Part shown: piece after piece, positions 6,996-47,832 of the stretch
Position numbering within the stretch: position 1 is the first letter of the stretch
How the letters are laid out: every line of letters begins with the position of its first letter
Assembly: GCF_963921235.1 (NCBI RefSeq)
Contig: NC_086128.1
Span: 13,206,001 to 13,270,000 of the forward strand
Direction of reading: 5' to 3'
Origin: Mobula hypostoma
Taxonomy: Eukaryota
DNA length: 64,000 nucleotides
Position numbers and translations under genes: made by a program
Notes under the pieces: model-generated
The model's input: only the letters and a program-made list of their open reading frames with translations
Database searches by the model: none
Told to the model about the DNA's origin: nothing

Positions 6996-9900
6996 ATTCA
7001 AGTCAATCTGCTTTAATATGTTAGCTATTGGCAACATTACACAGGTAATGCACCAATGTGCAAAGACAAAAAACAAAGTATAAACATTGCATATTCAGGT
7101 AAGTCAGGGGAAAAAAGACACCTCCTAGAGTCTTTTGTATTGGATTTACTTTATTCCAAACCGAAGTTTATTGAGCAGATATTGACATGATGTGTTACTA
7201 AATCTGTAATAAATAACAGAATTGATGTTCTCTTCTGACTTCCTACTTGACCACTTGCAAAGATTTTTTGATGCTTTGATTTCAATTCTATACACGTAGA
7301 AAGCAAAGATTATGAACAAGAGCAGGATCAGTTAAAACCTGCTCGATCATGGCTGCATTTTGCCATTCTATCTGGTCGTATATATCTGAATGCAGCTCAG
7401 AGCATAAAGCAGATGAATTCAAACAATGTTAGAAATCATCATCAAGCAAAATGGGGAAAGAGCTATAACCTTAAGCCAAGCTACAAATGGAGTCAATCCT
7501 CTGACGCTGACTCTGGCTCAAGCTACGATTCAAGCTGACCCCAGACAAGTCAGTTTAAGCAAGTTAATACAAACTAGTGGATTTCATAAGCAAAGCGGAA
7601 ACCCAAAAAAATATCTAGGAACACTGCTAAATGTAGTTCATTATTTAGAACTATATCTTTTAAATCCAGTGAAAATGATGTGATTAAGAACTGAAAATGT
7701 TCAACAAAGAAACATCACAATGCACACACACAATCCAACAGTACAATTACTTCCCCCATTTGTTCAGCAAGATGCAGATATTTTCCCTCTATAACTAATT
7801 GCCCTGTGCATGACATTACCGAACCTATAGGTAACAAACTGGCTGTCCTTCACCCAGCATTATACTGCTCTGAAACTGGTGCTGCTGGCAGAACAATTCC
7901 TTCTGCGGCCCCTCCCTATGCTTTCAATGTGAGGAAGTAGTTGATTTTCTGTCCAGCTCTTTCCCTCATAGACATAGCAAGTTTGCAGCTTTATATCCCT
8001 CTTCATACAAAATACTTGTTTCCCAATTCAAATTCAAATCTTCCACAGTTGTTGGGTAAGACAATGAACCATAATAGGTGTTTCTGTTGGACGCCCACAC
8101 TCCGCACAAAATCTATTGTATAAGTTATTCTGGCGAATTATGACCATCCAATATGTATGAATGACAGACAAAAGGTCTTTAAGTACTTGCTAAACTGCCT
8201 AGATTTTTCTGAGCACTTAAGACTAAAAACCCTTAGTGAATACTTAAAATAATTATTAACGTCAAGAGTTAAAACATTAACTGATGATATACGATATATA
8301 CAAGTTATACACTATTGAAAAAGTGCTTTTTAAAAATTTTATCACAATATGATTTTAAAAATCTACAATTTGCACAATATATCAATTAAACAACATACAA
8401 AAGAAAACTGGGAGTTTAGGTTATATAAAAGTTAATTAGAAAATAATATTACATGCATCCCAATTGAGAAACACAAGAAAGATAAATTTTTTCCAAGTCC
8501 AGTAGCTCCTTCAAAAAGAACATGAACTCACCAGTTCTGGTCCTGAATCAGTTTTAATCCCAACAATATAAGCAACAACACTACAGAACATTCATTTTAA
8601 TATATTTTGTAGTATTTACACATAGTGTTTAACCAATCGTACTAACTAGAGGGTAACCAACAGTAAACATTTACAGATTCCCAATAAATCGCAACTTCTC
8701 ATAAACATCAGACAGCATTGACATTTGGTATCTACAGTAACAACTTATTAGTTAAAAAATGGACAAAATGAGCTTTCTGGGCCTTTAAAACATATCACAA
8801 ATTGTTACACATTTTGGATTTTTTTTGGCTGCAATGAACAAATCTTGGAAGTTAGCTACTATGTTGTACAATCTCAGGGATTCTTAAAAGAGTAAAGTGT
8901 TAGCTGTATTTTAGGACCAAGGCTTACAGAAGACTCGTGCCAAATTTCTCACTGTTGGTGTTGGCCTTATAAATCCTTCCCCACAAAGTGCATTTTCAAA
9001 CTGTTCACGATGACTCAAAAAGAAACTCCCATGTTCATTGCAGTAGGTTAGAAATCTATTGACTTCCAAACAATAGATTAAAAATTTAACGTAAAAAGTT
9101 GTAGAATTATCATTATGACACTAATATGCAGGCATAGGTTTATCTTCCAAATGTCACTAACTTTTACCTCCTCTTTACAGCTCACTCAAGATGCCCCAAG
9201 AGTGCAGGACATTTATGCATCCAATGGTGCATTTTGTTTTAAGTAAAGGAAAATGAAATCGGCACAATTATGTACCACTCATGCAAATTACATTCAGAAA
9301 CACTTAAACTGTCAAGCATTGGGACTCTATGTCCTCAAGTCTTTCTTGCTGCATTTCACTTTTCTAATCTATGTATAATTGCAAAACTTCCCCTTCCTCT
9401 TTTGCCTTTGCCAATTTTTTTACTGTCATCTTTCTCACTCAAAAGGTCCAGACACAATGTGGTCAAGGTGCTATCTGATAATTAATGAGCCCATGTAGCA
9501 TATTATGCTGAGTCAGACTTTATGCTTGACAGCCACAAGCATTTTCAGCAGGGATACTCAGATAATATACTTCAATGCACATTTATACTATTCATGACTA
9601 AAATGTATTTTAGTCAAATCACTTACATATATATTATGTATACAGTAGCATTTTGCATGTGTTTTTATCTTGTGCAATTGGTTTTGCAACTTAAAGCATC
9701 AGACATCCCCAAAACCCTCCGATTGAAAATGAACTAACTGCACAGTGGGGCATCTGACTGGTGAGTGCCCAGGTCAGGTGTGAAAATGGCATGGTATTAT
9801 ACAAGAGCTGTGCATCAACTTTCCAATAATGCAACAGCATATATATGAAACCAGCAATTTTTCCTTTACATCTTCTGCTGCAATACTTGACATGCTTATT

Positions 9901-11713
9901 TACAGACCAACACCCAGTTTCCATACCTAGGCACGAAATGAAATCTATATGTATTATATATTCATTTATCTTCGCTTCACAAGCTTGCATCACAATTACT
10001 TGCATGTTCTAGCTTCACTTTAATATCCTTGGTGGTTACAGCAACTGTTAATGGTGAAAGTATATTAATTTTTATTTCTAAAACACTTTTTGTATTCCAT
10101 TTTCAGAGGACTTCTACAGTTTTGAAAGAAAAATATAGAACATGAACAAATGCTTTATCAGAAAAATCTGTTTTTAAGAATACAAAAGAAAACATGTTAA
10201 TTGATGGCTTAAAAAAGAGGCAGAGTGCATGCTTAATTATTAAAATACTTTGAACTAAATAAAATGACTCTCAATTTTTTTCTCCATACACATTTGCTTA
10301 AAAGTGGGATGGATACAAAAATTATTTTCTCACATACCAGAATACTTATGCTTAGCAAAAAGTAGGGATATTGCTAATTAATTTCTAATAACGATCCCAA
10401 ATGTAATTTCTGAATAAAAAGGAAAATTTGTGGCACAGGATCACTATTTAAAAATACACTGTAATCAACCAAAAAATGTGATAAATTAACACGTTAAGGG
10501 GATGAGGAAGTGTGCTCATTATCCCATTTAATTGTTTGTTTTGTCAGAACCCATACTCATTACTGTTCTTGCAGCAGATTTTTATATTTCATACAAGTAG
10601 AGGAAGTCTTGCCATCAACACCCCTTCTGGAAAAAACCTAATTTTTTTATTACATAATACAATTTGAACTTTTAGAGTACTCAAATCTGAGTATTTTTTG
10701 GAGTGAGACAGTTTGAAAGAGCTTAATAATCAGTAACTGCCATCATTAGCCCAAGGTGCTTCTGTGACCTTACTTCCAAATACCCTCACCCTTAAGTTAG
10801 CCCTATGTTGTTGCCCAACTCATTACTCTAAAGGAAAACGGCCATTATGTTATAGATTTGCATTGTCCTCCATTAGTGGGTGAAACTGACTAACTTATCT
10901 CACTTGTGCTACAAGAGTTTCACCAACAAGGAGAAACGGGAGCTATGGTGTCATTTTCCGCACACTCTTACTTCTGCTCTGATCACAATCAAAGCAGCAG
11001 AGGATGCTTCTTCAGATAGGTGGGGTGAAGAGAAAGAGGGTAATTTACTATACTTTCATTTTAAAAAATTCCTGGGTTTAAAAAAAAAGATAAAAAAACA
11101 TCAATGACTGAAAAGGCACAAAGCTCTTTAAGCGCATACATATGTGCTTTTAGGAAGCGTTTTTAGATGTTGATTGAAACCAATTTTATATGAGCAAGCA
11201 AAGCAGCCATACTTGCAAACAAAACCTATTCCCACTGCTGCAGCAGTCGGAGAGCTCGAGTTGGTGTGGGAATTGCAATGCGCTGTCAAAGACTTTGCCT
11301 TCATTAGCACCAGAGCTTACAATGTGAGCAAATCAAAACAAAAATCAAGGTTTCTGCTGACACCAAATGTTAAAGGAATTCAAAAACATAAGTCCTATTT
11401 AACCCTTTGTCCCCCCCCCCAAAATATTTGCGACATATGTAATGGCAAATTGTTTTAACTTCCATTTGCTACTATTACTGAATTACAATTCTGCGCAGAC
11501 TTCTCCTGGTGAGTTCAACAGCAATTGCTACTTGAGACAGGAAACAAAAAAAGAATTCTCATTATTTCTTTTTTTTTTTGCTTTTGCAAAAGGGTTCGTG
11601 ATGGTGAGACTCCCTCTTTAAGAATCATACTTGACTCATTTTTCACAATTGCCCTAGGAAGCAATGAGAAATAGAAAACTCCTGTAAAGCTTCGAATGAA
11701 ATGTCCTCTAATC

Positions 11714-13360
11714 TCAACTCTCCTCCGCACGACAGAGGAACCTCATACTCTGTGATGCATTTGGATAACTGACCATTTGAGTGGTGGTATAACTCATGGC
11801 AATTCCAGGAAGTGATTGCGTTACTGCCACTGGTGCAACTGAAATGGCAATTGGTGCCACTGAAACTGGTGAAGCCATCCCTTGGGCATAAGGTGTAGAG
11901 AGAGCAGCACTAAGGTGGGGTGGACTTTGGGACGTAGCTTCAGAACACAAAGCATTGTGAGCTCTCGCTTGCGCTATCAATTCTTGATGAGAAATAGGCT
12001 GTGATCTCAAGGATTGGTTGCTGAGGGTGGTATGAGTCTCCACTATGCTATGATTATAATTGGTAACACTGTGCATAGCTGGTGACTGTGTTGGGTCAGT
12101 TCCTGTGGTCAGGATTCCTAGCTTCACTTGTTTGCGGAGATCAGCATTTTGTTTCAGAAGTACCTCATTTGTAATCATTAGGCTTGATACCTGCTTCTTG
12201 AGCTCTTCATTGCGCTTTCTAAGCATATGGTTTTCCTCCTCCAGGAAACTCCTTTCAACTGGCCGCAGACTGGGTGTACTGTAATCAAATACTTCAAACC
12301 GCAAGCCCTCCATTCTTTTCCTTTTTGGATTTTGGTCATAAGCACATTTCTCAGTCTCATAAAGGTCATCCAAACGGTCATATCTGCAGATCTCAGGGGA
12401 AGCCTCTCTATTTTGCGACACTTTTTCTGTGCTTTTCTTATCATTGTCATCACGTTTCAAGTGCTGAAATTTACACTTGGATCCTCTTCGACATTTGCCT
12501 TTGAGAAAGTCACGGCAGAATGGGACTTCCTTTGTAATAAGGGGCAAATTGGAGGGCGAGAGCCCAAATGTCACAGCCACTGTCTTTTGCAAGTGGGCAG
12601 GAAGCTTACCTGTTTTATTGTAATAATTTTCTTCAGCCTTTGTCCCGTGAATGAACGTGCAGTTTTCACGGGTACACTTACTATTCTGAAAGTACTGACA
12701 AAATATAGACTCATGCCGCATATCACCTACATCATAGGCTTCAACATTGTCTGGGTGAAAGTACCTGCAATTCTTACCACGACTGCAGACATTGCGCAGA
12801 AAATCACGACAAACATTCCGTTTGTTCTTGCTAGCATCATATTTGCTATTATTGACTAAGTTATCAGCATCATCACTTAGGTCAGCATGGTTGGATACCT
12901 CAATATCATCTGGGTGAAAATATCTGCAATTCTTACCACGATTGCAGAGATTGCGCAGAAAGTCTCGGCAAATGTTCAGTTTGTTTTTGCCAGCCTCATC
13001 ATTGCCAACGTTGACTAAATTATCAATGTCATTCCTTATGTCAGCAAGGTCTGAAGCCTCAATGTCATCTGGATGGAAGTACCTGCAATTCTTACCACGG
13101 CTGCAGATATTGCGCAGAAAGTCTCGGCAAATGTTCTGTTTGTTTTTACCAGCTTCATCGTTAGCAATGTTGACTATATTATCAGTGTCATTCCTTATGT
13201 CGGCGAGGTCGGAGGCCTCAATATTGTCGGGGTGGAAGTACCTGCAATTCTTACCACGGGTGCAGACATTGCGCAGAAAGTCTCGGCAAACATTCCGTTT
13301 GCTCTTGCCAGGCTCATATTTGCCGCTGTTGACTAAATTATCAGTGTCGTTCTCCGACAT
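11714..13360 (-). CDS. ZC3H10-like paralogue with expanded N-terminal CCCH zinc fingers (548 aa, 6 CCCH fingers, coiled coil, low-complexity C-terminus)
   Basis: Uninterrupted 548-aa ORF. Four copies of CRDFLRNxCxRGKNCRYFH, then CQYFQNSKCTRENCTFIH and CRDFLKGKCRRGSKCKFQH, FLEEENHMLRKRNEELKKQ coiled coil and YPNASQSMR. Colinear with the ZC3H10 ORF at 34823-36025. Polypyrimidine/CAG acceptor just upstream (exon starts 13408). Confidence 0.9.
   Translation of the reverse strand: MSENDTDNLVNSGKYEPGKSKRNVCRDFLRNVCTRGKNCRYFHPDNIEASDLADIRNDTDNIVNIANDEAGKNKQNICRDFLRNICSRGKNCRYFHPDDIEASDLADIRNDIDNLVNVGNDEAGKNKLNICRDFLRNLCNRGKNCRYFHPDDIEVSNHADLSDDADNLVNNSKYDASKNKRNVCRDFLRNVCSRGKNCRYFHPDNVEAYDVGDMRHESIFCQYFQNSKCTRENCTFIHGTKAEENYYNKTGKLPAHLQKTVAVTFGLSPSNLPLITKEVPFCRDFLKGKCRRGSKCKFQHLKRDDNDKKSTEKVSQNREASPEICRYDRLDDLYETEKCAYDQNPKRKRMEGLRFEVFDYSTPSLRPVERSFLEEENHMLRKRNEELKKQVSSLMITNEVLLKQNADLRKQVKLGILTTGTDPTQSPAMHSVTNYNHSIVETHTTLSNQSLRSQPISHQELIAQARAHNALCSEATSQSPPHLSAALSTPYAQGMASPVSVAPIAISVAPVAVTQSLPGIAMSYTTTQMVSYPNASQSMRFLCRAEES
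12716..13351 (-). repeat. Coding tandem repeat, 4 x 159 bp (53 aa), each unit carrying one C-x7-C-x5-C-x3-H finger
   Basis: TTCTTACCACG recurs at 12771, 12930, 13089 and 13248 (exact 159-bp period). The translated units align residue for residue. Confidence 0.95.
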
Positions 13361-15239
13361 GCTTCCAGATTATTTCTGCGCTAATCAGCCAAGGCTCTCA
13401 ATAAACAACTGTAAAAGAAAAAGAAGCCAGGTCTTTTACAATGAATAAGAGATTAATCTACAAAGTAATTTAGGTTAATCCCTTTCTCACAAAATATTGT
13501 AGATTTATGTACATTGGCAAATCACTAGAAAATACTTACTGGAAGGTATGAGCAGAACATTGAGGTTTACATTAAAATCATAAAGGGATAAGTAGTATTG
13601 TCTGTTTTTTAAAAAACTTTTACAACCACAGATACCATTGCTTTGTGTTTTTCTGAAAAAAAATACTGGCATTGTACATAAGCATGCCTTTGTGAATGTT
13701 AATACTCCAGGTAATACAGTTAGGAAAAATAGAATGCATACTGCAAACGTTTTAATAGAAATTTGTAAATGCAGTGAGATAGAATCAGCACAAGAAATAA
13801 TTACTAGGGAAACAGGTTAAAGAAAGATTAGGGAGGAGGTGCTGATTTAGCTCACCAGAATCCTTCAACCACAATTAAAAGATACCATAAGTATTGGGTA
13901 AATGAATACTGAAAGCCAATCTTTGACTTTTCACAAGGAACTCCAACAAGAATAGTTAACTACTTTGGAATTTTTCTATCTGCAACAGACATGTTTTTTT
14001 AAGCCAGAATTGGTCACTTAAATTCAACCTTAAAAATAGCAACACATATTTTGTTCTGCCATCCATGTGTAAACAATACCAGAGACTGCAAGGTAAATGT
14101 TTGATATCAATTTTATCAGTAAAAGCAATAGGTATGTTTTAGACTGTATATGAATATCTCTAAATACACAAATTAGCATATTACAGACACAATCAAGACA
14201 TGTCGTTGCAATATGCGTAAATAAAGAAATATTATTGAAGTTACAACCATGAATGTGAGGTTAAAATTTTCATTTGTAAAAGCCAATTTTAAAGAAAACA
14301 TATGCTTAATAGTAATGTCAAGATAACTAAAATAGCAATTTTGAATGGATTTTAAAACAGACTATAGAAATAACAAAATTCCATCAACATATATTGTCAA
14401 CTTCATTGCAAACTATGTAATTCTCAGGAATTAAAGCTGTGAGTTCTAATGTGGTAATGCACATTCCTTTGGCATTGTAATGTTGACTCGCATTTATTGC
14501 CTCCTTTAGCACCATTTTACATTATTGCCTCTGATCTCAAACAATACCTAACCTCTCTCTATGATTCCCAAGAAATTTCATCATTTTGAGTTCAAGTCCT
14601 TACCCCTTTTAAATCTTTAGGAAAATAACGTGTATCAAACAACTTCCAAGTATTGATCTCGTATTCCAAAACTAGCAGTTGGTTCTTTCTGCACTATTCT
14701 AAATGATGCAAAAGCTAGCTATTTAAGAGAATTGACACTCATTTACTTTTACTGAATAAACACCAAAATTTAGATTGATATAATCATCACTCTTCTAAGC
14801 AAAATCTCCTGCCTCTCCATGAGTCCCAGAGTCTTTCGATATCTTCCTTGAAATAAAGAAAAACTTATGCTATTGCTTATTTTAATTAATTCTTTCTCAG
14901 GGTCTCAAAAATTGAAGAATTTGTTACCTCACTTTCTCTGATTGAATTATCATTTCCTAGCTTTGCCGATCTTTTGATCTCCTAATTTATTTTAGTCATC
15001 CTCCAGAAAAGGACTTATTATTCAAGTTTTTCTATTATAGTTTAGAAAATTCAAATTTAAGGTGTAGGAGGTCAGCATTCAGTCCACTGTGCCCTCACTA
15101 ACAAAAGGAGGACATTGGGTTAATCCTAGTTCCCAATATTTGGTCGAATTTGGTCGCGAGTCTTACTCATCAAGTGCTCATCCAGATACAATTTAAATGT
15201 GGGGAAGGTTTCTACCTCCATTACCCTTAAGATATAGTA

Positions 15240-16440
15240 TGGTTGAATTTTCAAAACATGTTTGACGAGGTGCCATACAAAATCAGATAAGACCTTATGG
15301 CATTAGAGGTAATTTACTAGCATGGATAGAAGATTGGCTAATGAACAGGAAGCATCAAGTAGGGACCATTTTTCAGCTGGCAATCTTGAACAATTGGAGT
15401 GATATAGAACACAGTTGTTATTGATTAACAGTAGTTCAGAAACAGGCTCCTCAGCCTACCATATCCATGTTGAAAAGTACACCCACCGTAAGTAAATTTG
15501 TAAATGATAAGCAACGTGGAAAGATGAGCTGTGAGGAAGATGCAGTTAATTTACTAAGAGGTATTGATACAAAGAATAGGCAAAAGGAAGTACAATATGA
15601 GGAAGGTGCAAATTGTTCACTTTGTAAGGAAGAATAATTAAACAGATTATTCAAATGGAGAAAGCCTGAAGAAAGCTTAGAGAACGAAGGATTTTTGAAC
15701 ATGAAACACGGAAGATTAGTGTATAGGACAGCAGGTAAAAGGGAAGGTTAATGGAATCAACACACACAAAATGCTGGAGGAACTCAGCAGGCGAGGCAGC
15801 ATCCATGGAAGTGGATAAGCAGTTGGTGTTTCGGGCCAAGACCCTTCTTCAGGATAGTTCATTCCCTTCATAATGGAATGCTAGTTTTTAATTCAGAGGC
15901 TTTAAGTATAACAGTAGAGAAATCTGACTACAATTGTACAAAGGCATCAGTGAGACCACATCTAGATTCGTGTACAGTTGGTCCCTTGACTTAAGGAATG
16001 GTACATCATTGGAGGAAGTTCAGAGGCTTCAACAAAGTGATCCTGGAAGTAGAGGGACTGTTTTATGGGGAAAAGAGTGAATAGATTGGGCCCACTCATT
16101 GGAGTTCAGAAGCATGAAAGCCAAACTTATTGAAATATCTAAGGTTCTTAGGAGACTTGAAATGATTTCCTGTTTATGAGTGTTGATGAAATTTGTTTTC
16201 AGATAAAAGGTGTGTCTATTTAAGACTGTGATGAAAAATCTCTCCAAGGGTTGCAAACTATTAAAATTCCTTATCCCAGAAAGCTGTGAAGGTTATATTG
16301 TTGAATATATTAAAAGACTAAGACAATTTAAAAAAAAAATCAGTCAGGGAATCTAGGGCTAGGGAGAAGTGGGCTTGACAGAAGTGGGATCAGCCATATT
16401 ATTGAAGTAGGTGAATGATCTACTCCTATTTCTAATGGCC
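15240..16440 (+). mobile_element. Old CR1 LINE fragment interrupted by a short Penelope-derived insertion (~15760-15856)
   Basis: Degenerate similarity to the CR1 copy at 2450-4280; the inserted piece matches the PLE 3'/hammerhead segment. Confidence 0.65.
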
Positions 16441-17244
16441 TTTCATGCATTGAATTCTAGACCATCACCACTCATTTAATGATTAATGAAACAAATATTC
16501 CTCAAACCTTTCTATTATCTTAAAGCCATTCTCCTGTTATTGGTCTCTCCAAGAGAAACACATCCTTCTAGTGTTTACTCTCTCTATGCCTCTCATGAGT
16601 TTAATAGATCTAAGTACTGAGCCCTATGGAGTCTGATTCTGTCAGTATATACTTTCTTGATCAACCTGCTAATTGACATTAATCTAACACCTTTCCAAAA
16701 TTCATTTATATTACATCAAATGCCCTTCAAGCATCTCTGCAAAAGTTTAATTAAGTGTGTCTGATTTACGCAAATTTCCAACAACAATCCATGCTATCAA
16801 AATGACTGGCCTGTGGATATTCATCTATCTCATTCCCCCTTTTTTTCCAAAATAGTACCACATGTGTAACTTTCCAGTCCTCTGTCACCACATTCGCAGA
16901 CAAAGAACAAAAGAAAATTATAGCCAAAGCTTGCACTATATCCTCTCCTGCTTCTTTTGAGAGCTTGGAATACATTTTATCTAGGCCAAAGCAATTTATC
17001 AATTTAAAAAAAAAGATGCCAGGTCTCTTTAATGCATCCTCATGTCACTTCACAATGCCAATACATATAATCATACCCCACTTCTTTAAAGACAAATACA
17101 AAATTTTCTTATAGAACTTTACACATCCCCTGGCTTCACACTCAGGCTGTTATTTGGTCTCTAATGCGACCTACTCCTTCTTTTTACCTTGAACTAGTTC
17201 TAATTTGTACTCAGGAGGAGGAGTCTGATTACATATCTAAGAGG

Positions 17245-18352: not shown

Positions 18353-19699
18353 CTGAGAAATATAGATAAGAGCAGAACTTGGTACTATTGTGCTTTCTTG
18401 TTACTGGCTTTTAAAAGTAGCAATACAACCTAGTCAAAATCATACAGAAATTTCTCCTCTTCCCACCCTCATTCCTGCCAAAAACTCAAGCAATACTGTG
18501 CAACAAACAACAATGCAGAATAGCACAGTGTCAGGATCTTCCCACAGTATGCATTTTACTAACTGATCTCAACTACCTGTATGTCAGGAAGAGAAGAACA
18601 AAAACAGTCTTTGACTATTAATATCTTTAGAATGGTAGGATTCCAGTTCAAACAGGATTAAAGAATACCCTTTCAGTACCTTCCAGTTGGACAAGGTCAC
18701 TCTAGAGATCCTGGGGTACATTTAATCCATCAACAAACATTCATAACTAAACTAATATCTTCAGTGGAGCTACCAAATTCATCAGATGAACGATAGCCAC
18801 ATTCCTAATGATATTCTGATGGTGAAATGGCTTCAGGGGTCACAGTCAGCTGGATGCCCATATTTCCAATAAACAAAGACAACTGTAAGTATGATTGAAG
18901 AAGGTGTGTTCTGGCAATTAACAAATAGTCATGAACAGTCATAATCTCTAGAGTTTGACTGTTCAGGAGGGCATTGAAGGAAAAAAACAAATTTCAACTA
19001 ACAGAAGTCAGAGAAAGCAGAAATAAGCAAATTTTCACTTCCTTAGCCCATGGCATTCATCTGCAGCAAGCGTGACAGAGATATTCAGGCGAAAGAGGAA
19101 TTCTAGGCCACACCAAGCAACGTCCAATGAGTGACTGACTATCAAAGAACAAATCATCACCCTATAGATTAGAAGGCTGCTATCCAGATGGACACTGGGT
19201 AACTGTAACTGTGGACCCCTACAGCAGTCAAAATTTACAGTTGGATCAAACTCCTAATTGGCTGGTGCAACCTCTAGACTACATCTCACATATCATTAGC
19301 TCTAGGAGGGTTAAGGAGACAAAACTGGGCAGGACAGAAAGGGAGGAAGACTGGAATTTTAAAAGTACGGTATTTACATCATAAATTGGTTGCAATGTTG
19401 CAATATTCAAAGTTGATTGCAAAATAAAAATTCCATAATTCCCTCACAAAATAGCAAAGAGAAAGGAAAATCTGATAATTTGGCCTCCCACATACCTGTA
19501 AATGGCCAAGTGCACCTCGCTGATTATTCCTTTTGAATGACAAAAGATGCAATGACCTAAGGAGGAAAATGTTAAATAACATAATGGCAACAGTAATTTG
19601 GAAATAAAATATTTTAAAATGCAGTCAGTATTATTTTTATAAGTCAACTAGTTAACACACTTATTTTAAAATCACACGCACACTCTTGAAATCAATTGA

Positions 19700-21000
19700 T
19701 TTAGTAGTTGAAAGTAACCCGGTTGAGTATTGTACGACATGGCTTCAGCTTCAATCTCCAGGATAACAACGCATCCTAGATCAAACCGAACTGCGATTAT
19801 CTCTTTTCCCAGACTCAGCGGCCTTTCGATACCCCCAGAACGGGCACAAAATGCTGCACACTTGGTTGAAGCTGGGCCACACCGTTGGTCCGTAATATCA
19901 AAAGAAAATCGCTTTCTGAGGCAATTAGTTTAAAATTTGAGATTTAAAATCAAGGACTTTAAAATCCCGTAGGAGCATCACGATTGAAAAAACTATAAAT
20001 TCAGCTTGGACGCTCTTTTATGGTTCATTCATTTTGACATTGTGTATTTTCTTTTTGTGTATCCGGAATACACAATTCTATTCCTTCAAGACGGCCATAA
20101 GTTTTAATCTAACCACTAGATGTGACTTTCTCCACAAACAATTTTTGTTCCTCGGCCTACCGCCATGAGGAGACTCGTCGAAAACGGGCTATTGACAGTT
20201 TTGGTGGCGTCGCGGCGGAAAGTTCTCGAACTTGCTGCGAGGCTTCGACTGCGTTCCTAGGCCTCAAGTGTTTTACACAAATTGATAAAATTCCAGCACG
20301 CAAAGGAAAGCAAAACCGTTATTTGATTTCTAAAGACGTAAATAAATAATCTCACTTTGCCAGTACTGGGAATAAACTCGATAAATAAGAAACGGAAGGC
20401 AAGAAACACATTTACTTACACTATTTAGCCTTTCACCCCTCACTTGGTCCTCCAAGCACAACCAGCTTCGATTCAGGTCCTCCGAGGCAAGAGCAACCGT
20501 AGAAGACGCTGTTTGGAGCGACTCTACGAGCATCTGTCGATGAACGGCAATCTGTTCAGCTGTTGACGACGAGTGTGTAGTTCGGGACTGTTTTCTAACA
20601 CAATATTTTTAGATGTTTAATTTCAAAATTTATATTTAGGCTATTCGGTTTACACAACTTTTAATTTGAAATACTGCATCTCATTGCGAATTTGATCAAA
20701 GAAATTAAGCGTTCGAACCTGTTATTTGGCTCTAATTCGCTCTTGCCTAAGAGGACCTGTTCGGTGCTCGTTGTGTTTGGAGGAGCGAGTAAGGGAGCCG
20801 AACCATGTATGTAAATAAGCCCCAATTTTCTATCAATTTTATAATAGTTCCAATCCGTTCTTTTAATTATGCCAAGAGTTTAAATATTCTTAGTCAACAT
20901 TTAGTTCTGTTAATACATGGATTTGTTCCATGCAACGGAACGTTGAGGCCTACAAATCCCGTAACAGCCTTCGAAGTTTGTTACTGTATATCGCATGATT
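19700..21000. promoter_or_regulatory. CpG-enriched putative bidirectional promoter between the divergent ZC3H10 paralogues
   Basis: Visible CpG enrichment against CpG-poor flanks, no recognisable repeats, ETS-like CGGAA and CGCCAT motifs. Candidate donors point outward: minus GTAAGT at 20419-20414 and plus GTAAGG near 20789. Confidence 0.6.
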
Positions 21001-26899: not shown

Positions 26900-29800
26900 A
26901 CATCTGTTCCTACACTCTGGTTCCCCTCCCCCCTTGTATCTACTTTAAATCCACTGGAGCCTCTCTAGCGAACCTACCTGCAAGAATATTAGTCACCTTC
27001 CAGTTCAGAAGTAAACCGTCCCGCTGGAACATGTCCCATCTTCCCTGGAAAACTGCCCAATTATCTATAAATTTGAAGCCTTCCCTCCTGCACCATGTCT
27101 ACAGCCACATGTTGATCTGCGCTGTCTTACTATTTCTAAACCCGCCTGCACGTGGCACTGGTAGCAATCCTGAGATTGCTATCATAGAAACCATAGAAAC
27201 TACAGCACAGAAACAGGCCTTTTGGCCCTTCTTGGCTGTGCCGAACCATTTTCTGCCTAGTCCCACTGACCCACACACGGACCATATCCTTCCATACACC
27301 TCCCATCCATGTATCTGTCCAATTTATTCTTAAATGTTAAAAAAGAACCCACATTTACCACCTCGTCTGGCAGCTCATTCCATACTCCCACCAGTCTCTG
27401 TGTGAAGAAGCCCCCCCCTAATGTTCCCTTTAAACTTTTCCCCCCTTCCCCTTAACCCATGTCCTCTGGTTTATTTCTCCCCTTGCCTCAGTGGAAAAAG
27501 CCTGCTTGCATTCACTCTATCTATACCCATCATAATTTTATATACCTCTATCAAATCTCCCCTCATTCTTCTACGCTCCAGGGAATAAAGTCCTAACTTA
27601 TTCAACCTTTCTCTGTAACTGAGTTTCTCAAGTCCCGGCAACATCCTTGTAAACCTTCTCTGCACTCTTTCAACCTTATTTATATCCTTCCTGTAATTTG
27701 GTGACCAAAACTGAACACAATACTCCAGATTCGGCCTCACCAATGCCTTATACAACCTCATCATAACATTCCAGCTCTTATACTCAATACTTTGATTAAT
27801 AAAGGCCAATGTACCAAAAGCTCTCTTTATGACCCTATCTACCTGTGACGCCACTTTTAGGGAATTTTGTATCTGTATTCCCAGATCCCTCTGTTCCACT
27901 GCACTCCTCAGTGCCTTACCATTAACCCTGTATGTTCTACTTTGGTTTGTCCTTCCAACGTGCAATACCTCACACTTGTCTGTATTAAACTCCATCTGCC
28001 ATTTTTTAGCCCATTTTTCCAGCTGGTCCAAGTCCCTCTGCAGGCTCTGAAAACCTTCCTCACTGTCTACTACACCTCCAATCTTTGTATCATCAGCAAA
28101 TTTGCTGATCCAATTTACCACATTATCATCCAGATCATTGATATAGATTGCAAATAACAATGGACCCAGCACTGATCCCTGTGGCACACCACTAGTCACA
28201 GGCCTCCACTCGGAGAAGCAATTCTCCACTACCACTCTTTGGCTTCTTCCATTGAGCCAATGTCTAATCCAATTTACTACCTCTCCATGTATACCTAGCG
28301 ACTGAATTTTCCTAACTAACCTCCCATGTGGGACCTTGTCAAAGGCCTTACTGAAGTCAATGTAGACAATATCCACTGCCTTCCCTTCATCCACTTTCCT
28401 GGTAACCTCCTCGAAAAACTCCAATAGATTGGTCAAAGATGACCTACCACGCACAAAGCCATGTTGACTCTCCCTAATAAGTCCCTGTCTATCCAAATGC
28501 TTGTAGATTCTGTCTGTTAGTACTCCCTCCAATAACTAACCAACTACCGACGTTAAACTTACCGGCCTATAATTTCCCGGATTACCTTTCGATCCTTTTT
28601 TAAACAACGGAACAACATGAGCCGCTCTCCAATCCTCCGGCACCTTGCCTGTAGACAGCGACATTTTAAATATTTCTGCCAGGGCCCCTGCAGTTTCAAC
28701 ACTAGTCTCCTTCAAGGTCCGAGGGAACACCCTGTCAGGTCCCGGGGATTTATCCACTTTAATTTTCCTCAAGACAGCAAGGACCTCCTCCTTTTTGATC
28801 TGTACAGTTTCCATGATCTCACTACTTGTTTCCCTTAATTCCATAGACTTCATGCCAGTTTCCTTAGTAAATACAGACGCAAAAAACCTATTTAAGATCT
28901 CCCCCATTTCCTTTGGTTCTGCACATAGCCGACCACTCTGATCTTCAAGAGGACCAATTTTATCCCTTAGAATCCTTTTGCTCTTAATATACCTGTAAAA
29001 GCTCTTTGGATTATCCTTCACTTTGACTGCCAAGGCAACCTCATGTCTTCTTTTAGCCCTCCTGATTTCTTTCTTAAGTATTTTCTTGCACTTCTTATAC
29101 TCCTCAAGCACCTGATTTACTCCCTGCTTCCTATACATGTCATACAACTCTCTCTTCTTCTTTATCAGAGTTGCAATATCCCTTGAGAACCAAGGTTCCT
29201 TATTCCTATTCACTTTGCCTTTAATCCTGACAGGAACATACAAATTCTGCACTCTCAGAATTTCTCCTTTGAAGGCTTCCCACCTACCGATCACATCCAT
29301 GCCAGAGAACAACCTGTCCCAATCCATGCTTTTTAGATCCTTTCTCATTTCTTCAAATTTGGCCTTCTTCCAGTTAAGAACCTCAACCCTAGGACCAGAT
29401 CTATCCTTGTCCATGATCAAGTTGAAACTAATGGTGTTATGATCACTGGAACCAAAGTGCTCCCCTACACAGACTTCTGTCACTTGTCCTAACTCGTTTC
29501 CTAACAGGAGATCCAATATTGCATCCCCTCTAGTTGGTCCCTCTATATATTGATTTAGAAAACTTTCCTGAACATATTTTACAAACTCTAAACCATCTAG
29601 ACCCCTAACAGTATGGGAGTCCCAATCAATATATGGAAAATTAAAATCCCCTACCACCACAACTTTATGTTTCCTTCAGTTGCCCGCTATCTCTCTGCAG
29701 GTTTGCTCTTCCAATTCTCGTTGACTATTGGGTGGTCTGTAATACAATCCCACTAATGTGGCCATACCTTTCCTGTTTCTCAGCTCCACCCATAAGGACT

Positions 29801-33880: not shown

Positions 33881-34822
33881 CATTAGATTGGAAATAAAGT
33901 ATTCAAAAATACTTTGGGAAGCCCAAATCTGTGGAGAAACACTTTCCAGCAGGGATCATTGTGTTGAAATCAGAAATAGGAGCTCTTGTTATGTTTCCTT
34001 CCCCCTTTACTTTGGCTGAAGGGCAACTGTAATTAAATCAGTGCAAGTTGGCTTCATTTTATTTCATTATATCAGTTTTGCACCATCATTGGACTTGCTA
34101 CCATTATATTAGGAAATATTTGTTGGCTGAAGATGGATTTGTTATCTCCTAAAACTGTATCAAGCCTGTATCTCCAGAGGTGTGAAGTTATGGAGGGTGG
34201 GGGTTGGTGAGTAGAAACAATGTGATTGCTGCCTGCTATGTTTGAAAGCATGCATATACATTTAGTAGTGATACATATTTAACAGTTCACACTGGAAAAC
34301 TTTAACCTAAAAATTAGTCTTCCAAAAATCTTACATTGGCATTCATTTAACAGCAGTTGTATAATGTATCCCACAGTGATAAAGGGAGCACTCTTTTACT
34401 CTTTTGGTTGTAATCGCAAAACAAAATAAGTTTGGCAAATTTTCAACAGAACCTTAATGGGCCTAAGTAATTGCACAAAAATTTGAAATTTACTAGGGAG
34501 AAGCACCCAATATATTCCCAGTCTTAAGCCCTAGGGATAAATTATTGGGGAATGAAATTGTGTCACTGGTATGATGGGTCCTATTTATCTTGGGTATGAT
34601 CAAGGGGAAGTGTATTACAACTAACCTTATAATATTTGATGTCAACACCAGCCAAACACTGTTCCCAGTCAACATTGTTCAGCTTGCTGAGCTCAAAATG
34701 CAGTAGTTCAAGTAACGTTTACTTTGTGGGTTAATTCCTCCTTCTCTGTAAAGACATACCTTGATTTTCTTTTTCAGATGTTTTAATGTACAGTTGCTGA
34801 GAAACAATAATAGTCTGTGAAG

Positions 34823-36025
34823 ATGCCGGATAAAGATAATTTATTTAACAGTGGTAATGACGAGGCTGGCCACAGCTCAGATGATATTTGCCGTGACTTC
34901 CTGCGCAATGTCTGCAAACGTGGCAAGCGCTGCAAGTTCTACCACCCTGACATTAATGAGGTATCCGACTTGGGCGTTAAAAAAAATGAGTTTGTCTTTT
35001 GCCATGATTATCAGAACAAGGAGTGCACTCGTATCAACTGCAAGTTTATTCATGGGACAAAGGAAGATGAGGAACATTACAAAAAATCAGGGGAGCTTCC
35101 CCCACGTCTGCGCCTTACAGTAGCCATGGGTCTTGGCCTTTCACCATCTGACCTTTCCTTTAAAAAAGGCGAGGTTCCAATCTGCCGAGATTACCTGAAA
35201 GGGGACTGTCAAAGAGGATCTAAGTGTAAATTTCGGCACTTAAAACGTGATGAATATGAGTATGAAAACAGAACCTTAGAGAGATTGGCACGAGACCAAG
35301 TGCTTTCTCCTGTAGTGCGGCGATATGACCCATTTGATGACCTTTATGACTCTGATCGCTATACTGATTATGACCATATACTAAAGAGGAGAAGAGTGGA
35401 TGGCTTACGATTTGAAAGTTATGATTTTAGTATCTCAAATTCGCGTCCAGTGGACTATAGATTTCTAGAAGAGGAGAATCTGATGCTTCGAAAACGTGTT
35501 GAGGAACTTAAAAAACAGATCTCAAATTTGATGGCAACTAATGAGGTACTTTTGGAGCAAAATGCACATTTCCGCAACCAAACTAAGGTGGTGACGCTGA
35601 CTTCCACTCCCACAGCAACAGAGCAAATACTGGCAGCACCAACTGTGGCCACACTGACCAATTACAACCATGGTGTAGCACAGACTCATACTACTTTAAG
35701 CAGCCAAGCACTTCAACCACGACCCGTCACCCAGCAAGATCTAGTGGCAACTGCTGCAGCTTCTGCTGCAGCGCCTACCAATGCTGCACCAACAGCACAG
35801 CATCTTAATCCTGAAATTGCTTCTCTCCCTGCGGCACTTGCCCAGACCATTGCTCAGGGAATGGCACCTCCAGTTTCCATGGCTCCGGTGGCTGTCTCTG
35901 TTGCACCAGTGGCAGTATCAATTGCACAAGCTCTGCCAGGAATTACCATAAGCCATGCCACCACTCCAATGGTTACTTATCCAATTGCTTCGCAGAGTAT
36001 GAGAATTACAGCAATTCCTCACTGA
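34823..36025 (+). CDS. ZC3H10: Zinc finger CCCH domain-containing protein 10 (400 aa from the ATG at 34823)
   Basis: MPDKD...ICRDFLRNVCKRGKRCKFYH, CHDYQNKECTRINCKFIH, CRDYLKGDCQRGSKCKFRH, coiled coil and C-terminus YPIASQSMRITAIPH match vertebrate ZC3H10 as I recall it. The ORF track starts at a GTG (34817); the first ATG is 34823. Acceptor TTTTCTTTTTCAG ends at 34777. Confidence 0.95.
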   Translation: MPDKDNLFNSGNDEAGHSSDDICRDFLRNVCKRGKRCKFYHPDINEVSDLGVKKNEFVFCHDYQNKECTRINCKFIHGTKEDEEHYKKSGELPPRLRLTVAMGLGLSPSDLSFKKGEVPICRDYLKGDCQRGSKCKFRHLKRDEYEYENRTLERLARDQVLSPVVRRYDPFDDLYDSDRYTDYDHILKRRRVDGLRFESYDFSISNSRPVDYRFLEEENLMLRKRVEELKKQISNLMATNEVLLEQNAHFRNQTKVVTLTSTPTATEQILAAPTVATLTNYNHGVAQTHTTLSSQALQPRPVTQQDLVATAAASAAAPTNAAPTAQHLNPEIASLPAALAQTIAQGMAPPVSMAPVAVSVAPVAVSIAQALPGITISHATTPMVTYPIASQSMRITAIPH

Positions 36026-45700: not shown

Positions 45701-46956
45701 ACACAGATCAATTAGACACTTTTTATCCACTTTGAGGCAAGTTCTGCAACATGTTTTGTGAAAAAAGGCACTGGCACCTCTACTGGAAAATAAAATTGCC
45801 TATGGTCTTTATAACACTGCATCTTGAAATTTCATATTCTCTAAATTCTAAATTCAACTCTAAATTCTATGCTGGTACAACATTAGAATGCAGGGCATAT
45901 ACCCAAAATCAGCTTGTGAGTGGGCAAGGCAAACATAGAGGGTCAATCCAAACTATTTTAAAATTAAAATACTGAATTTTCTGGTGTTTATTTTGCAAAG
46001 TGAAAGGACTATAATGATCAGTTGTTGTATGTATAACATTTCATAAAGCAGAAGATTATACTTTGTCACAAAATCAATTTGCTCCCTTGTTTAATAATTT
46101 GAGTTAAATTGTCTTGAATGACAATCTAATCTATGTAAAAATACTTTTAAGTTGCAGGGTTTTGATAGTAAGAAAAATGTCTCTGAGGTTATGTAAATAC
46201 TATAAACTACTTAGAATGGTGGGGAGGGTTTTAAGTTGCACCAAGTGACCCAATACTATCTGTGTGATAAAACCTATTGGCTACAAAAGAAATTTTCCAA
46301 AACGCTAAGTTACCAGCAAAGTTCCACTTAATGATACCTCCTTATTTGGCGATTTTTTTCCGAAGTAAACTTCAATTTTATTTTGGAGGGATGGGGTGGG
46401 CGATGTTATGGGGAGCTGTTTGCTTTTTTTTTAAACAAAAAGGAAGTTATAAGATCTATAAAAATCCATTCTACTTCAGAAAAGGTAGATTTAACCAGCT
46501 AGATTGGACTTCCACTGCTGTAAAATGTAAACTTGCCTACGTTTTTCATGAACTTAAAGAACTTAAAAATATATTTTTGTCCCATCAAAACAGCCCATTA
46601 TATTATTAAAGCATGTGCAATTAGTACTTTAAAGATAGCAGGTTATAATTTCAATTTAACTTTTGTAAAATATGATTATATATAATATTTTTCCAATTAA
46701 TGAAATTCAAACCCTGAACTTGAAGAATCTTAGAATGTTGAAAATATCTGAGTAATTGATCTCCATTTGTTTTTTTAATTCCTTTTTATCTGTACTGTAA
46801 TTTAGATATTATAATTTCCTGCCTAGGGACATTGACAGCATTCATATTCTTTCAAGCACACCTTGAGTAAAAACACAGAAAATTTCACAATATATCTTTG
46901 TGATGATAGGATAGATCTTGTGTTGTAGACCACTTTCTTTAAAGAGAAAGCTACTT

Positions 46957-47142
46957 TTATAAGGCTTGTGTTTTGAGTTCAATGGGATCACTCCGAGGTT
47001 CCTGTTGTCCATCAGCTTCAAGGGGATGAGCTCCTTTAAGAATAGCCAATCTCTCTGAGATCCCTCTCATTCTGGGGAACAGGATAAAATCATACAGCAG
47101 AGCTGCAATAGAACCTCCTATCAGAGGGCCTACCCAGTATAC
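46957..47142 (-). CDS. MIP: MIP exon 4 coding part (aa 203-263 + stop)
   Basis: TTTGCAG acceptor; [10 protein letters not shown]...[16 protein letters not shown]...IELKTQAL*. The four exons sum to 792 nt = 263 aa, the AQP0 length. Confidence 0.95.
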
Positions 47143-47832
47143 CTGCAAAGACATAATTGACATAAATAACATAAGTGAAAAACAAAGTGGTGTTAACTAA
47201 TTAGAATTGAGCATTTCCTCCTAAGGCTTGTGACTGAGACAATGCATGATTCCATAGGTCCTAATGTCCCACCTGAACCTTACCCAAGTGAATATCTTAA
47301 TGTATGAATCTAAGCAACCCAGCTATTTCTTCAGGGATACATCATAGATGAGCCAGTTCCTAAAGTTATTCAACATATGTATTTTCACCAACTGTTACAA
47401 ATGTTCCAGTTCATAGCAACCTTGCATCTGGACAATACAAACTCCACTGAAGAGACCGGAGTATGAAAATCTTAGTTAGTGCTCCAGTGCAGTATTTCTG
47501 GGCGTTCTACTCTGTTGAAGGTGTCTTTTGGGTGAGACATTCATCTGAAGGAACAGATGATATCAGATCTGCTCTTTCAAATCTATATCATTTTTCAAAA
47601 AAAAAGGCAGGGGTATTATCTCAGCTGTCAATATCTCTATAAGCCAGTATCTGGGTTATTATTGTGTTGATGTTTGTGTGAATTGCCTGCTTAGTTTCCT
47701 ATCTTATAACTGTAATTGAACTTTGAAAGTACTTTGACTGTAAAGTGCTTTACAGCCTGAGGCCATAAATAGAGGATTTTGTATATGCCCATCTACACTT
47801 TTCTACGAGAGTCACCAGTAGTAAATATTGCA

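What the first reader, a model, noticed from the sequence alone, without database searches (positions are those of the whole stretch)
11714..13360. Intact ZC3H10 paralogue with a fourfold first zinc-finger module (six CCCH fingers)
Seen: a second, clearly divergent but fully open 548-aa ZC3H10-like ORF in which the 53-aa N-terminal module (linker plus finger 1) occurs four times. All Cys/His ligands are kept in all six fingers, as are the basic NLS-like patch (PKRKR vs KRRR) and the coiled coil. Known: ZC3H10 is normally a three-finger nucleic-acid-binding protein, and I know it as single-copy. Inference: a lineage-specific duplicate under purifying selection with an enlarged, possibly altered RNA/DNA-binding array. 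The shared coiled coil could allow heteromerisation with the parent. This is the best candidate for an undescribed system in the window.
Basis: partly seen in the sequence, partly recalled or inferred. Interest (0 to 1): 0.8.

Follow-up and report, generated by a model that had tools for sequence, protein, structure and literature searches.

The report
Six-finger ZC3H10 paralogue of sharks and rays
This is a real, expressed and strongly conserved second copy of the nucleic-acid-binding gene ZC3H10 that all surveyed sharks and rays carry, with its first zinc-finger module repeated four times; databases already list it under an automatic name, but I found no study of it.

Summary
Window 11714-13360 (-) is an open 548-aa ORF, 49% identical to the canonical ZC3H10 ORF 21 kb away. 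It has a 159-bp unit in four in-frame copies and six complete CCCH fingers. It is not a lineage oddity or an assembly artefact. The same protein, with fingers at the same positions, is annotated as 'ZC3H10-like' in at least 19 shark and ray species. The window's own product is already in NCBI/UniRef.

The repeat units group by position, not by species, so the fourfold array predates the shark-ray split. dN/dS is 0.10-0.28, against 0.015-0.10 for the parent. Transcript contigs of 4.9-5.4 kb from three organisms carry the whole array and stop at a splice acceptor, so the gene is transcribed and spliced.

The pair lies head to head in four species. The first exons map to one CpG-rich segment that holds mirrored splice donors in an inverted repeat, which suggests an inverted DNA duplication and a shared bidirectional promoter.

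The NLS, the p38 site, the critical finger-2 arginine and a six-heptad leucine zipper are kept. A heterodimer model with the parent passes its controls but cannot tell hetero- from homodimer.

The function, a dimeric multivalent RNA/DNA binder, is inferred. I class it as a new variant of a known kind, of moderate interest.

The parts
11714..13360 (-). Complete coding sequence of the ZC3H10-like paralogue (548 aa plus stop), all within the last exon
   Evidence: ORF list. Identical to database protein P0121. Orthologues are 85-91% identical.
12725..13360 (-). Four in-frame 159-bp units (residues 1-212). Each encodes the N-terminal D-x-D-N-L-V-N motif, CCCH finger 1 and the HPD..E..D tail.
   Evidence: TRF period 159, 0% indels. 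Unit sequences and unit tree.
12458..12724 (-). Fingers 5 and 6 (equivalent to ZC3H10 ZF2 and ZF3) and the linker holding the conserved S268-P269 site
   Evidence: Motif positions 221 and 282. Invariant R231, S268 and P269.
12107..12247 (-). Leucine zipper, residues 372-418. Leu at d positions 373, 380, 387, 394, 401, 408; Asn at a positions 377, 384, 398, 405.
   Evidence: Heptad register. AF2 helix 367-418 with pLDDT 90-96. In-register parallel contacts in the complex model.
12317..12331 (-). Basic patch PKRKR (residues 344-348), aligned with the experimentally defined NLS of human ZC3H10 (205-213)
   Evidence: Alignment. NLS defined in PMC13375009.
13361..13408 (-). 5' UTR part of the coding exon. 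The splice acceptor AG is at 13410-13409, after a polypyrimidine tract.
   Evidence: Sequence. Transcript contigs in four runs stop at 13412, with four letters ambiguous with the end of the 61-nt upstream exon. Spliced Logan contig L004.
13409..19495 (-). Intron (GT at 19495-19494, AG at 13410-13409), about 6.1 kb
19496..19556 (-). 61-nt non-coding exon. Some transcripts read through its acceptor, so a proximal first exon extends to at least 19642.
   Evidence: L004 aligns to 19642-19500. L012 aligns to 19500-19556, with AG and GT on the minus strand of the Leucoraja genome.
20437..20795 (.). Shared 5' segment. It is canonical ZC3H10 exon 1 on the + strand (about 20442-20785) and, by homology to Leucoraja contig L012, a distal first exon of the paralogue on the - strand. 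It is bounded by inverted-repeat arms 20437-20494 and 20739-20795 that carry the two mirrored splice donors.
   Evidence: Leucoraja transcripts L012-L014 mapped to the window and to their own genome. Inverted repeat. CpG o/e 1.16 in 20000-20999. Block and cross-strand hits conserved in five other elasmobranch species.
8261..11713 (-). 3' UTR; the extent is inferred. Contigs run about 2.5 kb beyond 10800. A proximal end lies near 10893-10919 in another batoid.
   Evidence: Record lengths and laid ranges. L003-L005 end at 10893-10919; a single 6.2-kb block at 76% identity with Narcine ends at 8216. No AATAAA or ATTAAA was found near either end.
34823..36025 (+). Canonical ZC3H10 coding exon (400 aa, three fingers), the parent copy, head to head with the paralogue

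Best explanation
This is a functional, ancient paralogue of ZC3H10 that is present throughout sharks and rays.

Inferred origin: an inverted DNA duplication of ZC3H10, including the end of its first exon, placed the two copies head to head on one CpG-rich promoter region. Three in-frame tandem duplications of a 159-bp segment (N-terminal motif plus finger 1) then built a four-module array. All of this happened before sharks and rays separated. A burst of change followed, with 54 fixed differences from the parent, and then purifying selection.

Inferred mechanism: the protein enters the nucleus through the retained basic patch and forms a parallel dimer through its six-heptad leucine zipper. 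It binds nucleic acid with an enlarged array. In mammalian ZC3H10, ZF1 and ZF2 together bind RNA (GCAGCG / AGUGCAG), and the zipper region is needed for DNA binding. Four ZF1-type fingers on flexible linkers would therefore add valency, or length, to the recognised site. That suggests clustered or repeated short motifs as targets, with 12 fingers per dimer.

The paralogue is expressed in the same samples as the parent, so it could act alone or as a heterodimer with it.

Shown here: the gene is intact, conserved, constrained, transcribed and spliced. Inferred: the mode of origin, dimerisation, nuclear localisation, nucleic-acid binding and its specificity.
For: Intact ORF and repeat.

Conservation:
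- Orthologues of 545-557 aa are 85-91% identical. They come from Heptranchias, Narcine, Chiloscyllium, Pristiophorus, Scyliorhinus, Mobula, Hemitrygon, Hypanus, Cetorhinus, Stegostoma, Heterodontus, Mustelus, Rhinoraja and Pristis.
- Fingers sit at identical positions in all 22 such proteins.
- Units cluster by position. Same-position identity across species averages 92%, against 78% for different positions. The U3 and U4 clades have 98/97 and 100/98 support.

Selection:
- NG86 dN/dS is 0.10-0.28 overall, 0.15-0.33 in the array and 0.08-0.32 in the rest. The parent gives 0.015-0.10.

Synteny:
- The pair is head to head, 16-22 kb apart, in Narcine, Heptranchias, Pristis and the window.

Expression:
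- One contig of 4.9-5.4 kb per run (X1, X3, X5, X15; three organisms) covers 10800-13412. X1 and X3 show one mismatch.
- Each contig stops at the acceptor and continues for a further 20-270 letters (about 225-270 in X1, X3 and X5) that are not in the adjoining intron, while the intron itself has only scattered short pieces.
- L004 joins 19642-19500 to 13410.
- The parent is found in the same runs.

Shared promoter and inverted repeat.

Retained functional residues:
- R231 (human R89), S268-P269 (mouse S126-P) and PKRKR (human NLS 205-213) are kept.

Zipper:
- AF2 helix 367-418 has pLDDT 90-96.
- The heterodimer model is in register: ipSAE 0.61 against a best control of 0.00, partner pLDDT at least 63, runs agreeing in at least 65% of contacts. 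The mark was reached by 51 of 78 solved complexes and 2 of 108 mismatched pairs.

Parent's functions: PMC6911170, PMC11612968, PMC13375009.
Against: - There is no direct evidence for any biochemical activity of this protein.
- The AF2 model is poor over units 1-3 (pLDDT 25-54; mean 46.9), so the geometry of the array is unknown.
- Tissue and expression level cannot be read from contigs.
- Hemiscyllium ocellatum is modelled as two pieces (180 and 335 aa) that break in unit 4. This is either an assembly error or a real disruption.
- One batoid lineage (Logan contigs) has the last 46 residues replaced by 10 others, so the C-terminal tail may be dispensable.
- The complex test does not discriminate between family members.
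- The paralogue-specific N384 at a zipper core position could favour homodimers.
- The shared distal exon is seen in Leucoraja transcripts only. In the window species it is inferred from sequence conservation.
Confidence: 0.85

Rival explanations
1. The paralogue works mainly as a heterodimer partner, modulator or antagonist of canonical ZC3H10. It would bring extra fingers to the parent's DNA or RNA targets rather than having targets of its own.
For: The zipper is the best conserved part outside the fingers. The in-register heterodimer model scores 0.61 against a best control of 0.00; the mark was reached by 51 of 78 solved complexes and 2 of 108 mismatched pairs. Both mRNAs are in the same RNA runs. 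The first exons share one promoter region, which would couple their expression.
Against: The test passes close relatives of true partners, so it cannot separate hetero- from homodimers. All paralogues have Asn384 at a zipper a position where canonical proteins have Val (Met in Callorhinchus). They also have L408 for F and V412 for T. From general knowledge of bZIP zippers, an Asn-Val a-a' pair is disfavoured relative to Asn-Asn and Val-Val. No binding data exist.
Confidence: 0.3
2. The duplication is older than elasmobranchs, dating to the chondrichthyan stem or earlier. The copy would then have been lost in chimaeras, and possibly in bony vertebrates, rather than being an elasmobranch invention.
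For: The ML tree puts the paralogue clade outside the Callorhinchus plus elasmobranch canonical clade (98/95). Holding paralogues together with elasmobranch canonical copies costs 10.3 lnL units, AU p = 0.014. Holding them with all chondrichthyan canonical copies is not rejected, p = 0.22.
Against: The paralogue stem is long (0.64-0.86 changes per site) and the tool warns that long branches meet. Without the long outgroups the rejection weakens to p = 0.081. No Callorhinchus paralogue appears among the protein hits or within 10 kb on either side of Callorhinchus ZC3H10, whose downstream MIP-family neighbour is conserved. The promoter block has no match there.
Confidence: 0.45
3. The fourfold repeat, or the whole copy, is an assembly artefact or a decaying pseudogene.
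For: Tandem repeats are prone to mis-assembly. Two RefSeq models deviate: Pristis at 495 aa, and Hemiscyllium split at 180 and 335 aa.
Against: Independent transcript contigs from three organisms carry all four units, with no joints inside the CDS. The units are 14-25% diverged from each other, so they cannot collapse or expand by mis-assembly. The Pristis genomic ORF is a whole 548 aa, and its model merely drops residues 47-99 as a false 159-nt intron. dN/dS is well below 1.
Confidence: 0.02
4. The copy is a retrogene, made from a reverse-transcribed ZC3H10 mRNA, since its coding sequence is intronless.
For: The whole CDS lies in one exon.
Against: The parent's CDS is also in one exon. The paralogue has its own 5' UTR introns with GT-AG sites. 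It lies head to head next to the parent in all four species checked. An inverted repeat around the two first-exon donors mirrors the parent's exon 1 end. That pattern is expected of an inverted DNA duplication, not of retroposition.
Confidence: 0.05

Closest known systems
[quoted passage not shown]
   Same: The domain order is the same from unit 4 onwards: N-terminal motif, ZF1, ZF2, SP site, ZF3, basic NLS patch, leucine zipper, and an Ala/Pro/Val-rich tail ending in the YP.ASQSMR motif. Identity is 49% over 393 aa. Both have a single coding exon, and the two share a 5' region.
   Different: The paralogue has three extra ZF1 modules, giving six fingers instead of three. It has 54 fixed substitutions, some in every finger and in the zipper core (V to N384, F to L408). 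Its C-terminus differs (RFLCRAEES against RITAIPH). It evolves two- to threefold faster.
Multi-CCCH RNA binders such as Unkempt (six CCCH), ZC3H14/Nab2 (five to seven), MBNL (four) and ZAP (four); comparison from general knowledge
   Same: They have arrays of CCCH fingers in which each finger or finger pair reads a few bases, and valency sets affinity and site length. Pfam's best hit here is the ZAP-like zf-CCCH_10 model.
   Different: There is no sequence relationship beyond the finger itself. Here four of the six fingers are near-copies of a single finger on roughly 30-residue linkers, and the array is joined to a leucine zipper. The comparison is an analogy, not a tested membership.
bZIP transcription factors
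   Same: A six-heptad leucine zipper has Asn at several a positions. Yi et al. 2019 call the equivalent region of ZC3H10 a bZIP and show that it is needed for DNA binding.
   Different: Pfam bZIP_1 matches only residues 372-394, at E = 0.029 and 14.9 bits against a cut-off of 27.6. The segment just before the zipper is not basic, and the basic patch lies about 25 residues upstream.

Membership tests
ZC3H10 family (orthologues and paralogues of vertebrate ZC3H10) | Full-length sequence homology to ZC3H10, with the same order of domains | tested here: met
   BLASTP gives 49% identity over 393 aa, E = 3e-126, to the neighbouring canonical copy. All best database hits are ZC3H10. It aligns colinearly with human-like, coelacanth and chimaera proteins.
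ZC3H10 family (orthologues and paralogues of vertebrate ZC3H10) | Three CCCH fingers ZF1-ZF3 with complete Cys/His ligands | tested here: met
   Homologues of ZF1, ZF2 and ZF3 are at residues 184, 221 and 282, with all ligands invariant. There are three additional ZF1 copies.
ZC3H10 family (orthologues and paralogues of vertebrate ZC3H10) | NLS basic patch, leucine zipper / coiled coil and the critical ZF2 arginine (human R89) | tested here: met
   PKRKR at 344-348, heptad Leu at 373-408 and R231 invariant. The features are defined in PMC13375009 and PMC6911170.
ZC3H10 family (orthologues and paralogues of vertebrate ZC3H10) | Orthology to ZC3H10 proper, as opposed to a paralogue | tested here: not met
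   The window holds a separate canonical copy that groups with canonical ZC3H10 of other elasmobranchs. The 548-aa gene forms its own 100/100 clade.
ZC3H10 family (orthologues and paralogues of vertebrate ZC3H10) | RNA binding through ZF1 and ZF2; DNA binding through the zipper region | not testable with these tools
   Known for the mammalian protein only. It needs a binding assay with the shark or ray protein.
bZIP transcription factors (Pfam PF00170) | A match to the bZIP_1 model above its gathering score, with a basic region contiguous with the zipper | tested here: not met
   14.9 bits against a cut-off of 27.6, covering the zipper part only. There is no basic run directly before L373.
Processed retrogene | No introns, a location unlinked to the parent, and a poly(A) relic | tested here: not met
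   There are 5' UTR introns with GT-AG sites. The copy is adjacent to and head to head with the parent in four species.

The most novel reading that the evidence does not exclude
Sharks and rays have kept, since before the two groups split, a ZC3H10 relative in which the RNA-binding finger has been multiplied fourfold. It is driven from the same bidirectional promoter as its parent. The quadruple finger would make it a dedicated reader of tandemly repeated short motifs (a clustered GCAGC-like element in RNA or DNA), with its own homodimeric zipper code (Asn384) that insulates it from the parent. That would be a distinct regulatory factor with its own target set, not merely a redundant copy.
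Probability: 0.3. Interest if true: 0.6.

Novelty: new variant of a known kind. Interest (0 to 1): 0.42.

Why it matters
ZC3H10 is an unusual dual DNA- and RNA-binding regulator. It acts in thermogenesis and mitochondrial biogenesis, in pri-miRNA processing and in repression of interferon-stimulated genes.

This paralogue is a natural experiment. Evolution has multiplied only the first finger module, kept the copy number fixed at four across all surveyed sharks and rays, and left the parent next door on a shared promoter. Comparing the motif length, affinity and partner choice of the two proteins would show three things:
- what ZF1 contributes to specificity;
- how finger valency is used by CCCH proteins;
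- how paralogous zippers become insulated from each other.

For genome annotation, the finding corrects two misleading automatic models (Pristis 495 aa, Hemiscyllium split). It also shows that 'ZC3H10-like' in elasmobranchs is a distinct gene that deserves its own name. It is not a new kind of system.

Tried and rejected
- **Whole-protein AlphaFold2 model (48-row alignment).** Mean pLDDT was 46.9 and units 1-3 scored below 55. That is too poor for fold searches, so none were run, and nothing is claimed about the array's geometry.
- **Poly(A) signals.** No AATAAA or ATTAAA was found on the minus strand near 8150-8400 or 10850-10990. The 3' ends are therefore given only as approximate.
- **Hemiscyllium locus.** The 180-aa product is not on record, so the break in unit 4 could not be inspected.
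- **Scyliorhinus and Mobula loci.** No DNA was served, so they are missing from the dN/dS set.
- **Dating the duplication.** The AU test rejects an origin after the chimaera split at p = 0.014 with long outgroups, but only at p = 0.081 without them. The date is left open.
- **PA2G4 and ESYT1 (the human neighbours).** tblastn with fusion models P0055 and P0049 matched only their ZC3H10 parts in the window.
- **Literature.** No paper holds ZC3H10 together with 'elasmobranch'. The three papers holding 'shark' appear unrelated from their titles and abstracts.
- **Earlier scan notes.** Nothing concerned this gene.
- **Rejected readings.** Retrogene, pseudogene and assembly-artefact readings were considered and rejected (see rivals).
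Full report
**1. The observation**

The minus strand of the window holds an uninterrupted ORF from 13360 down to 11714, 548 aa long. Tandem Repeats Finder reports a 159-bp period, 3.8 copies, 83% matches and no indels at 12750-13352.

Read in frame, residues 1-53, 54-106, 107-159 and 160-212 are four versions of one module. The module has an acidic D-x-D-N-L-V-N motif, a short linker, a C-x7-C-x5-C-x3-H finger and an HPD..E..D tail. Two further fingers follow. All six CCCH motifs have complete ligands and start at residues 25, 78, 131, 184, 221 and 282. Pfam recognises the fingers; zf-CCCH_10 scores 8e-36.

A second, three-finger ORF lies at 34817-36025 on the plus strand. Its real start is the ATG at 34823, giving 400 aa. 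The long protein is 49% identical to it over 393 aa, from unit 4 to the C-terminus.

**2. Not private to this genome, and not unannotated**

A search of the 5.8-billion-protein collection returned proteins of 545-557 aa that are 85-91% identical. The 90% clusters hold RefSeq entries named 'zinc finger CCCH domain-containing protein 10-like'. They come from:
- sharks: Heptranchias, Chiloscyllium (two species), Scyliorhinus (two species), Stegostoma, Heterodontus, Cetorhinus, Mustelus, Pristiophorus and Hemiscyllium;
- rays: Narcine, Rhinoraja, Mobula, Hemitrygon, Hypanus and Pristis.

The window's own product is in NCBI/UniRef as P0121. All 22 such proteins have six fingers at the same positions. 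Every canonical ZC3H10 examined has three.

By tree and identity, the window comes from a myliobatiform ray nearest to Mobula.

Two deviating models are artefacts or need checking:
- The Pristis 495-aa model drops residues 47-99 as a 159-nt 'intron'. The genomic ORF there is a whole 548 aa.
- Hemiscyllium is modelled as a 180-aa piece and a 335-aa piece that break in unit 4. I could not inspect this locus.

**3. Age of the array**

In a tree of the 159-nt units from five species, units group by position rather than by species:
- The U3 clade has 98/97 support and the U4 clade 100/98.
- All units together form a 100/100 clade apart from the canonical finger-1 module.
- Same-position units average 92% identity across species, against 78% for different positions.

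So the fourfold array was complete before sharks and rays diverged, and it has not been homogenised since. From my own knowledge, that split is of the order of 270-300 million years old. The branching order suggests stepwise growth, with U2 and U3 as the youngest pair.

**4. Selection**

Nei-Gojobori estimates on codon alignments give dN/dS of 0.10-0.28 for the paralogue. The values are 0.15-0.33 in the array and 0.08-0.32 in the rest. The canonical copy in the same species gives 0.015-0.10.

In the protein tree the paralogue clade sits on a long stem (0.64-0.86 changes per site) but has short internal branches. That pattern indicates a burst of change followed by constraint.

Fifty-four positions are fixed for different residues in the two clades. 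They include sites in every finger and in the zipper core.

**5. Expression**

Logan contigs of four runs from three organisms were laid on 10800-16799. Each run has a single contig of 4.9-5.4 kb that covers 10800-13412. Organism A shows one mismatch in 2,613 letters. Each contig stops at 13412 yet continues for another 20-270 letters (about 225-270 in X1, X3 and X5; about 20 in X15), while the following 3.4 kb carries only scattered short pieces.

The stop coincides with a polypyrimidine tract and an AG at 13410-13409. A contig from another batoid (L004) joins the equivalent of 19642-19500 directly to 13410. The window has CAG|GTATGT at 19496|19495.

These are therefore spliced mRNAs. They carry all four units with no internal joint, which also rules out an assembly artefact.

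The contigs run about 2.5 kb past 10800. A single 6.2-kb block at 76% identity with Narcine ends at 8216. Together these suggest a conserved 3' UTR of about 3.4 kb. Contigs give neither tissue nor expression level.

**6. Genomic setting and origin**

The two genes are head to head and 16-22 kb apart in Narcine, Heptranchias, Pristis and the window.

Leucoraja transcripts of the canonical gene (L013, L014) place its first exon at window 20484-20785, followed by an optional 45-nt exon and the coding exon.

A third contig (L012) runs in one piece through the following, in this order:
- the reverse complement of the paralogue's coding-exon start;
- the paralogue's 61-nt exon (window 19500-19556);
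- the canonical first exon;
- the canonical coding exon.

In the Leucoraja genome, the paralogue-side junctions read AG and GT on the minus strand, and the canonical-side junctions read GT-AG on the plus strand. The simplest reading is that the two genes have overlapping, oppositely transcribed first exons on one segment.

In the window this segment is CpG-rich; o/e is 1.16 at 20000-20999, against 0.06-0.5 elsewhere. It is bounded by inverted-repeat arms at 20437-20494 and 20739-20795. The arms are 58 nt long and 80-90% complementary, and they contain the two mirrored donors.

The block and its cross-strand matches are conserved in Heptranchias, Pristis, Leucoraja and Narcine. This is what an inverted DNA duplication through exon 1 would leave, and it argues against retroposition. 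In the window species itself the shared exon is inferred, not observed.

**7. When the gene duplicated**

With an annelid and a hagfish as outgroups, the paralogue clade falls outside a 98/95 clade of Callorhinchus plus elasmobranch canonical copies.

The AU tests give:
- paralogues forced together with elasmobranch canonical copies: rejected, p = 0.014;
- paralogues forced together with all chondrichthyan canonical copies: not rejected, p = 0.22;
- the first test repeated without the long outgroups: p = 0.081.

No paralogue was found in Callorhinchus. It is absent from the protein hits and from the 10 kb on either side of Callorhinchus ZC3H10. A MIP-family neighbour is conserved on the downstream side.

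The copy is therefore at least crown-elasmobranch in age. Whether it is older remains open.

**8. How it probably works**

For mammalian ZC3H10 the papers report:
- three fingers, an NLS, a zipper (called bZIP or coiled coil) and a Pro-rich tail;
- RNA binding through ZF1 and ZF2, with motifs GCAGCG and AGUGCAG;
- DNA binding (TYCCNG) that needs the zipper region;
- p38 phosphorylation at S126;
- repression of interferon-stimulated gene promoters that needs the NLS, all fingers, the coiled coil and R89.

In the paralogue, the counterparts of R89 (R231), S126-P (S268-P269) and the NLS (PKRKR) are kept.

The zipper has Leu at six successive d positions (373-408) and Asn at a positions 377, 398 and 405, as in the parent. 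AlphaFold2 models it as one helix, 367-418, at pLDDT 90-96.

The pair of zipper segments (paralogue 340-425, parent 182-267) is modelled as an in-register parallel dimer:
- ipSAE is 0.61 against a best control of 0.00.
- Partner pLDDT is at least 63, and the runs agree in at least 65% of contacts.
- The mark was reached by 51 of 78 solved complexes and 2 of 108 mismatched pairs.
- The test cannot tell which family member binds.

All paralogues carry Asn384 at an a position where canonical proteins have Val (Met in Callorhinchus). From general knowledge of bZIP zippers, that is a typical partner-specificity switch.

My reading is a nuclear, dimeric nucleic-acid binder whose RNA-binding array has been lengthened by three extra ZF1 modules on flexible linkers. 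This would give more valency, or a longer or repeated target site. It is co-expressed with the parent and may be able to pair with it. All of this is inference.

**9. Novelty**

No paper in the searched library links ZC3H10 to elasmobranchs or describes the long form. Automatic annotation has nonetheless listed it for years. It is a new variant of a known family, not a new kind of system.

Noticed in passing
window 20437-20494 and 20739-20795: A 58-nt inverted repeat (80-90% complementary) brackets a segment of about 360 bp that serves as the first exon for canonical ZC3H10 (+). By homology to a Leucoraja transcript, it also serves as a distal first exon for the paralogue (-). Each arm carries a splice donor. 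It is conserved in five other elasmobranch species.
   Followed up: partly
window about 20779-20792: The canonical gene's exon-1 donor reads GGAGGA|GCGAGT in the window, where Leucoraja has GGAGGA|GTGAGT. This may be a GC-AG intron or a shifted donor in this species.
   Followed up: no
window 12725-13360, compared with 11714-12724: Synonymous divergence between species is lower in the repeat array (dS 0.11-0.30) than in the rest of the gene (0.21-0.71) for nine of the ten species pairs. The cause is unknown.
   Followed up: no
L003-L005 (Logan transcript contigs of an unnamed batoid), protein P0005: This lineage encodes a 512-aa form. The last 46 residues are replaced by 10 unrelated ones after residue 502. 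The form appears in three near-identical proteins on 21 contigs.
   Followed up: partly
RefSeq models P0133 and P0134 (Hemiscyllium ocellatum), P0126 (Pristis pectinata): The Hemiscyllium gene is modelled as 180-aa and 335-aa pieces that break in unit 4. The Pristis model omits residues 47-99, although the genomic ORF is whole.
   Followed up: partly
P0010 and P0013 (Rhinoraja longicauda, same contig); P0152 (Ambystoma mexicanum): Other lineages have their own extra three-finger ZC3H10 copies. Rhinoraja has two near-identical canonical copies, and the axolotl has a divergent 'ZC3H10-like' copy.
   Followed up: no
window 15756-15810: A short element inside the paralogue's intron is present at very high depth (summed contig depth up to about 120,000) with many different flanks in all four RNA runs. 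It is probably a high-copy interspersed repeat.
   Followed up: no
window 27471-29660 (-): Two adjacent ORFs of 374 and 353 aa resemble the two halves of a LINE-type protein (reverse-transcriptase-like motifs read by eye, no domain search run). They lie inside what is now mapped as intron 1 of canonical ZC3H10. A further RT fragment is at 63304-63816.
   Followed up: no
window 46825-47149 and 49059-49174 (-): Exons of a MIP/aquaporin-family gene lie downstream of canonical ZC3H10. The neighbour and orientation match those beside Callorhinchus ZC3H10.
   Followed up: partly
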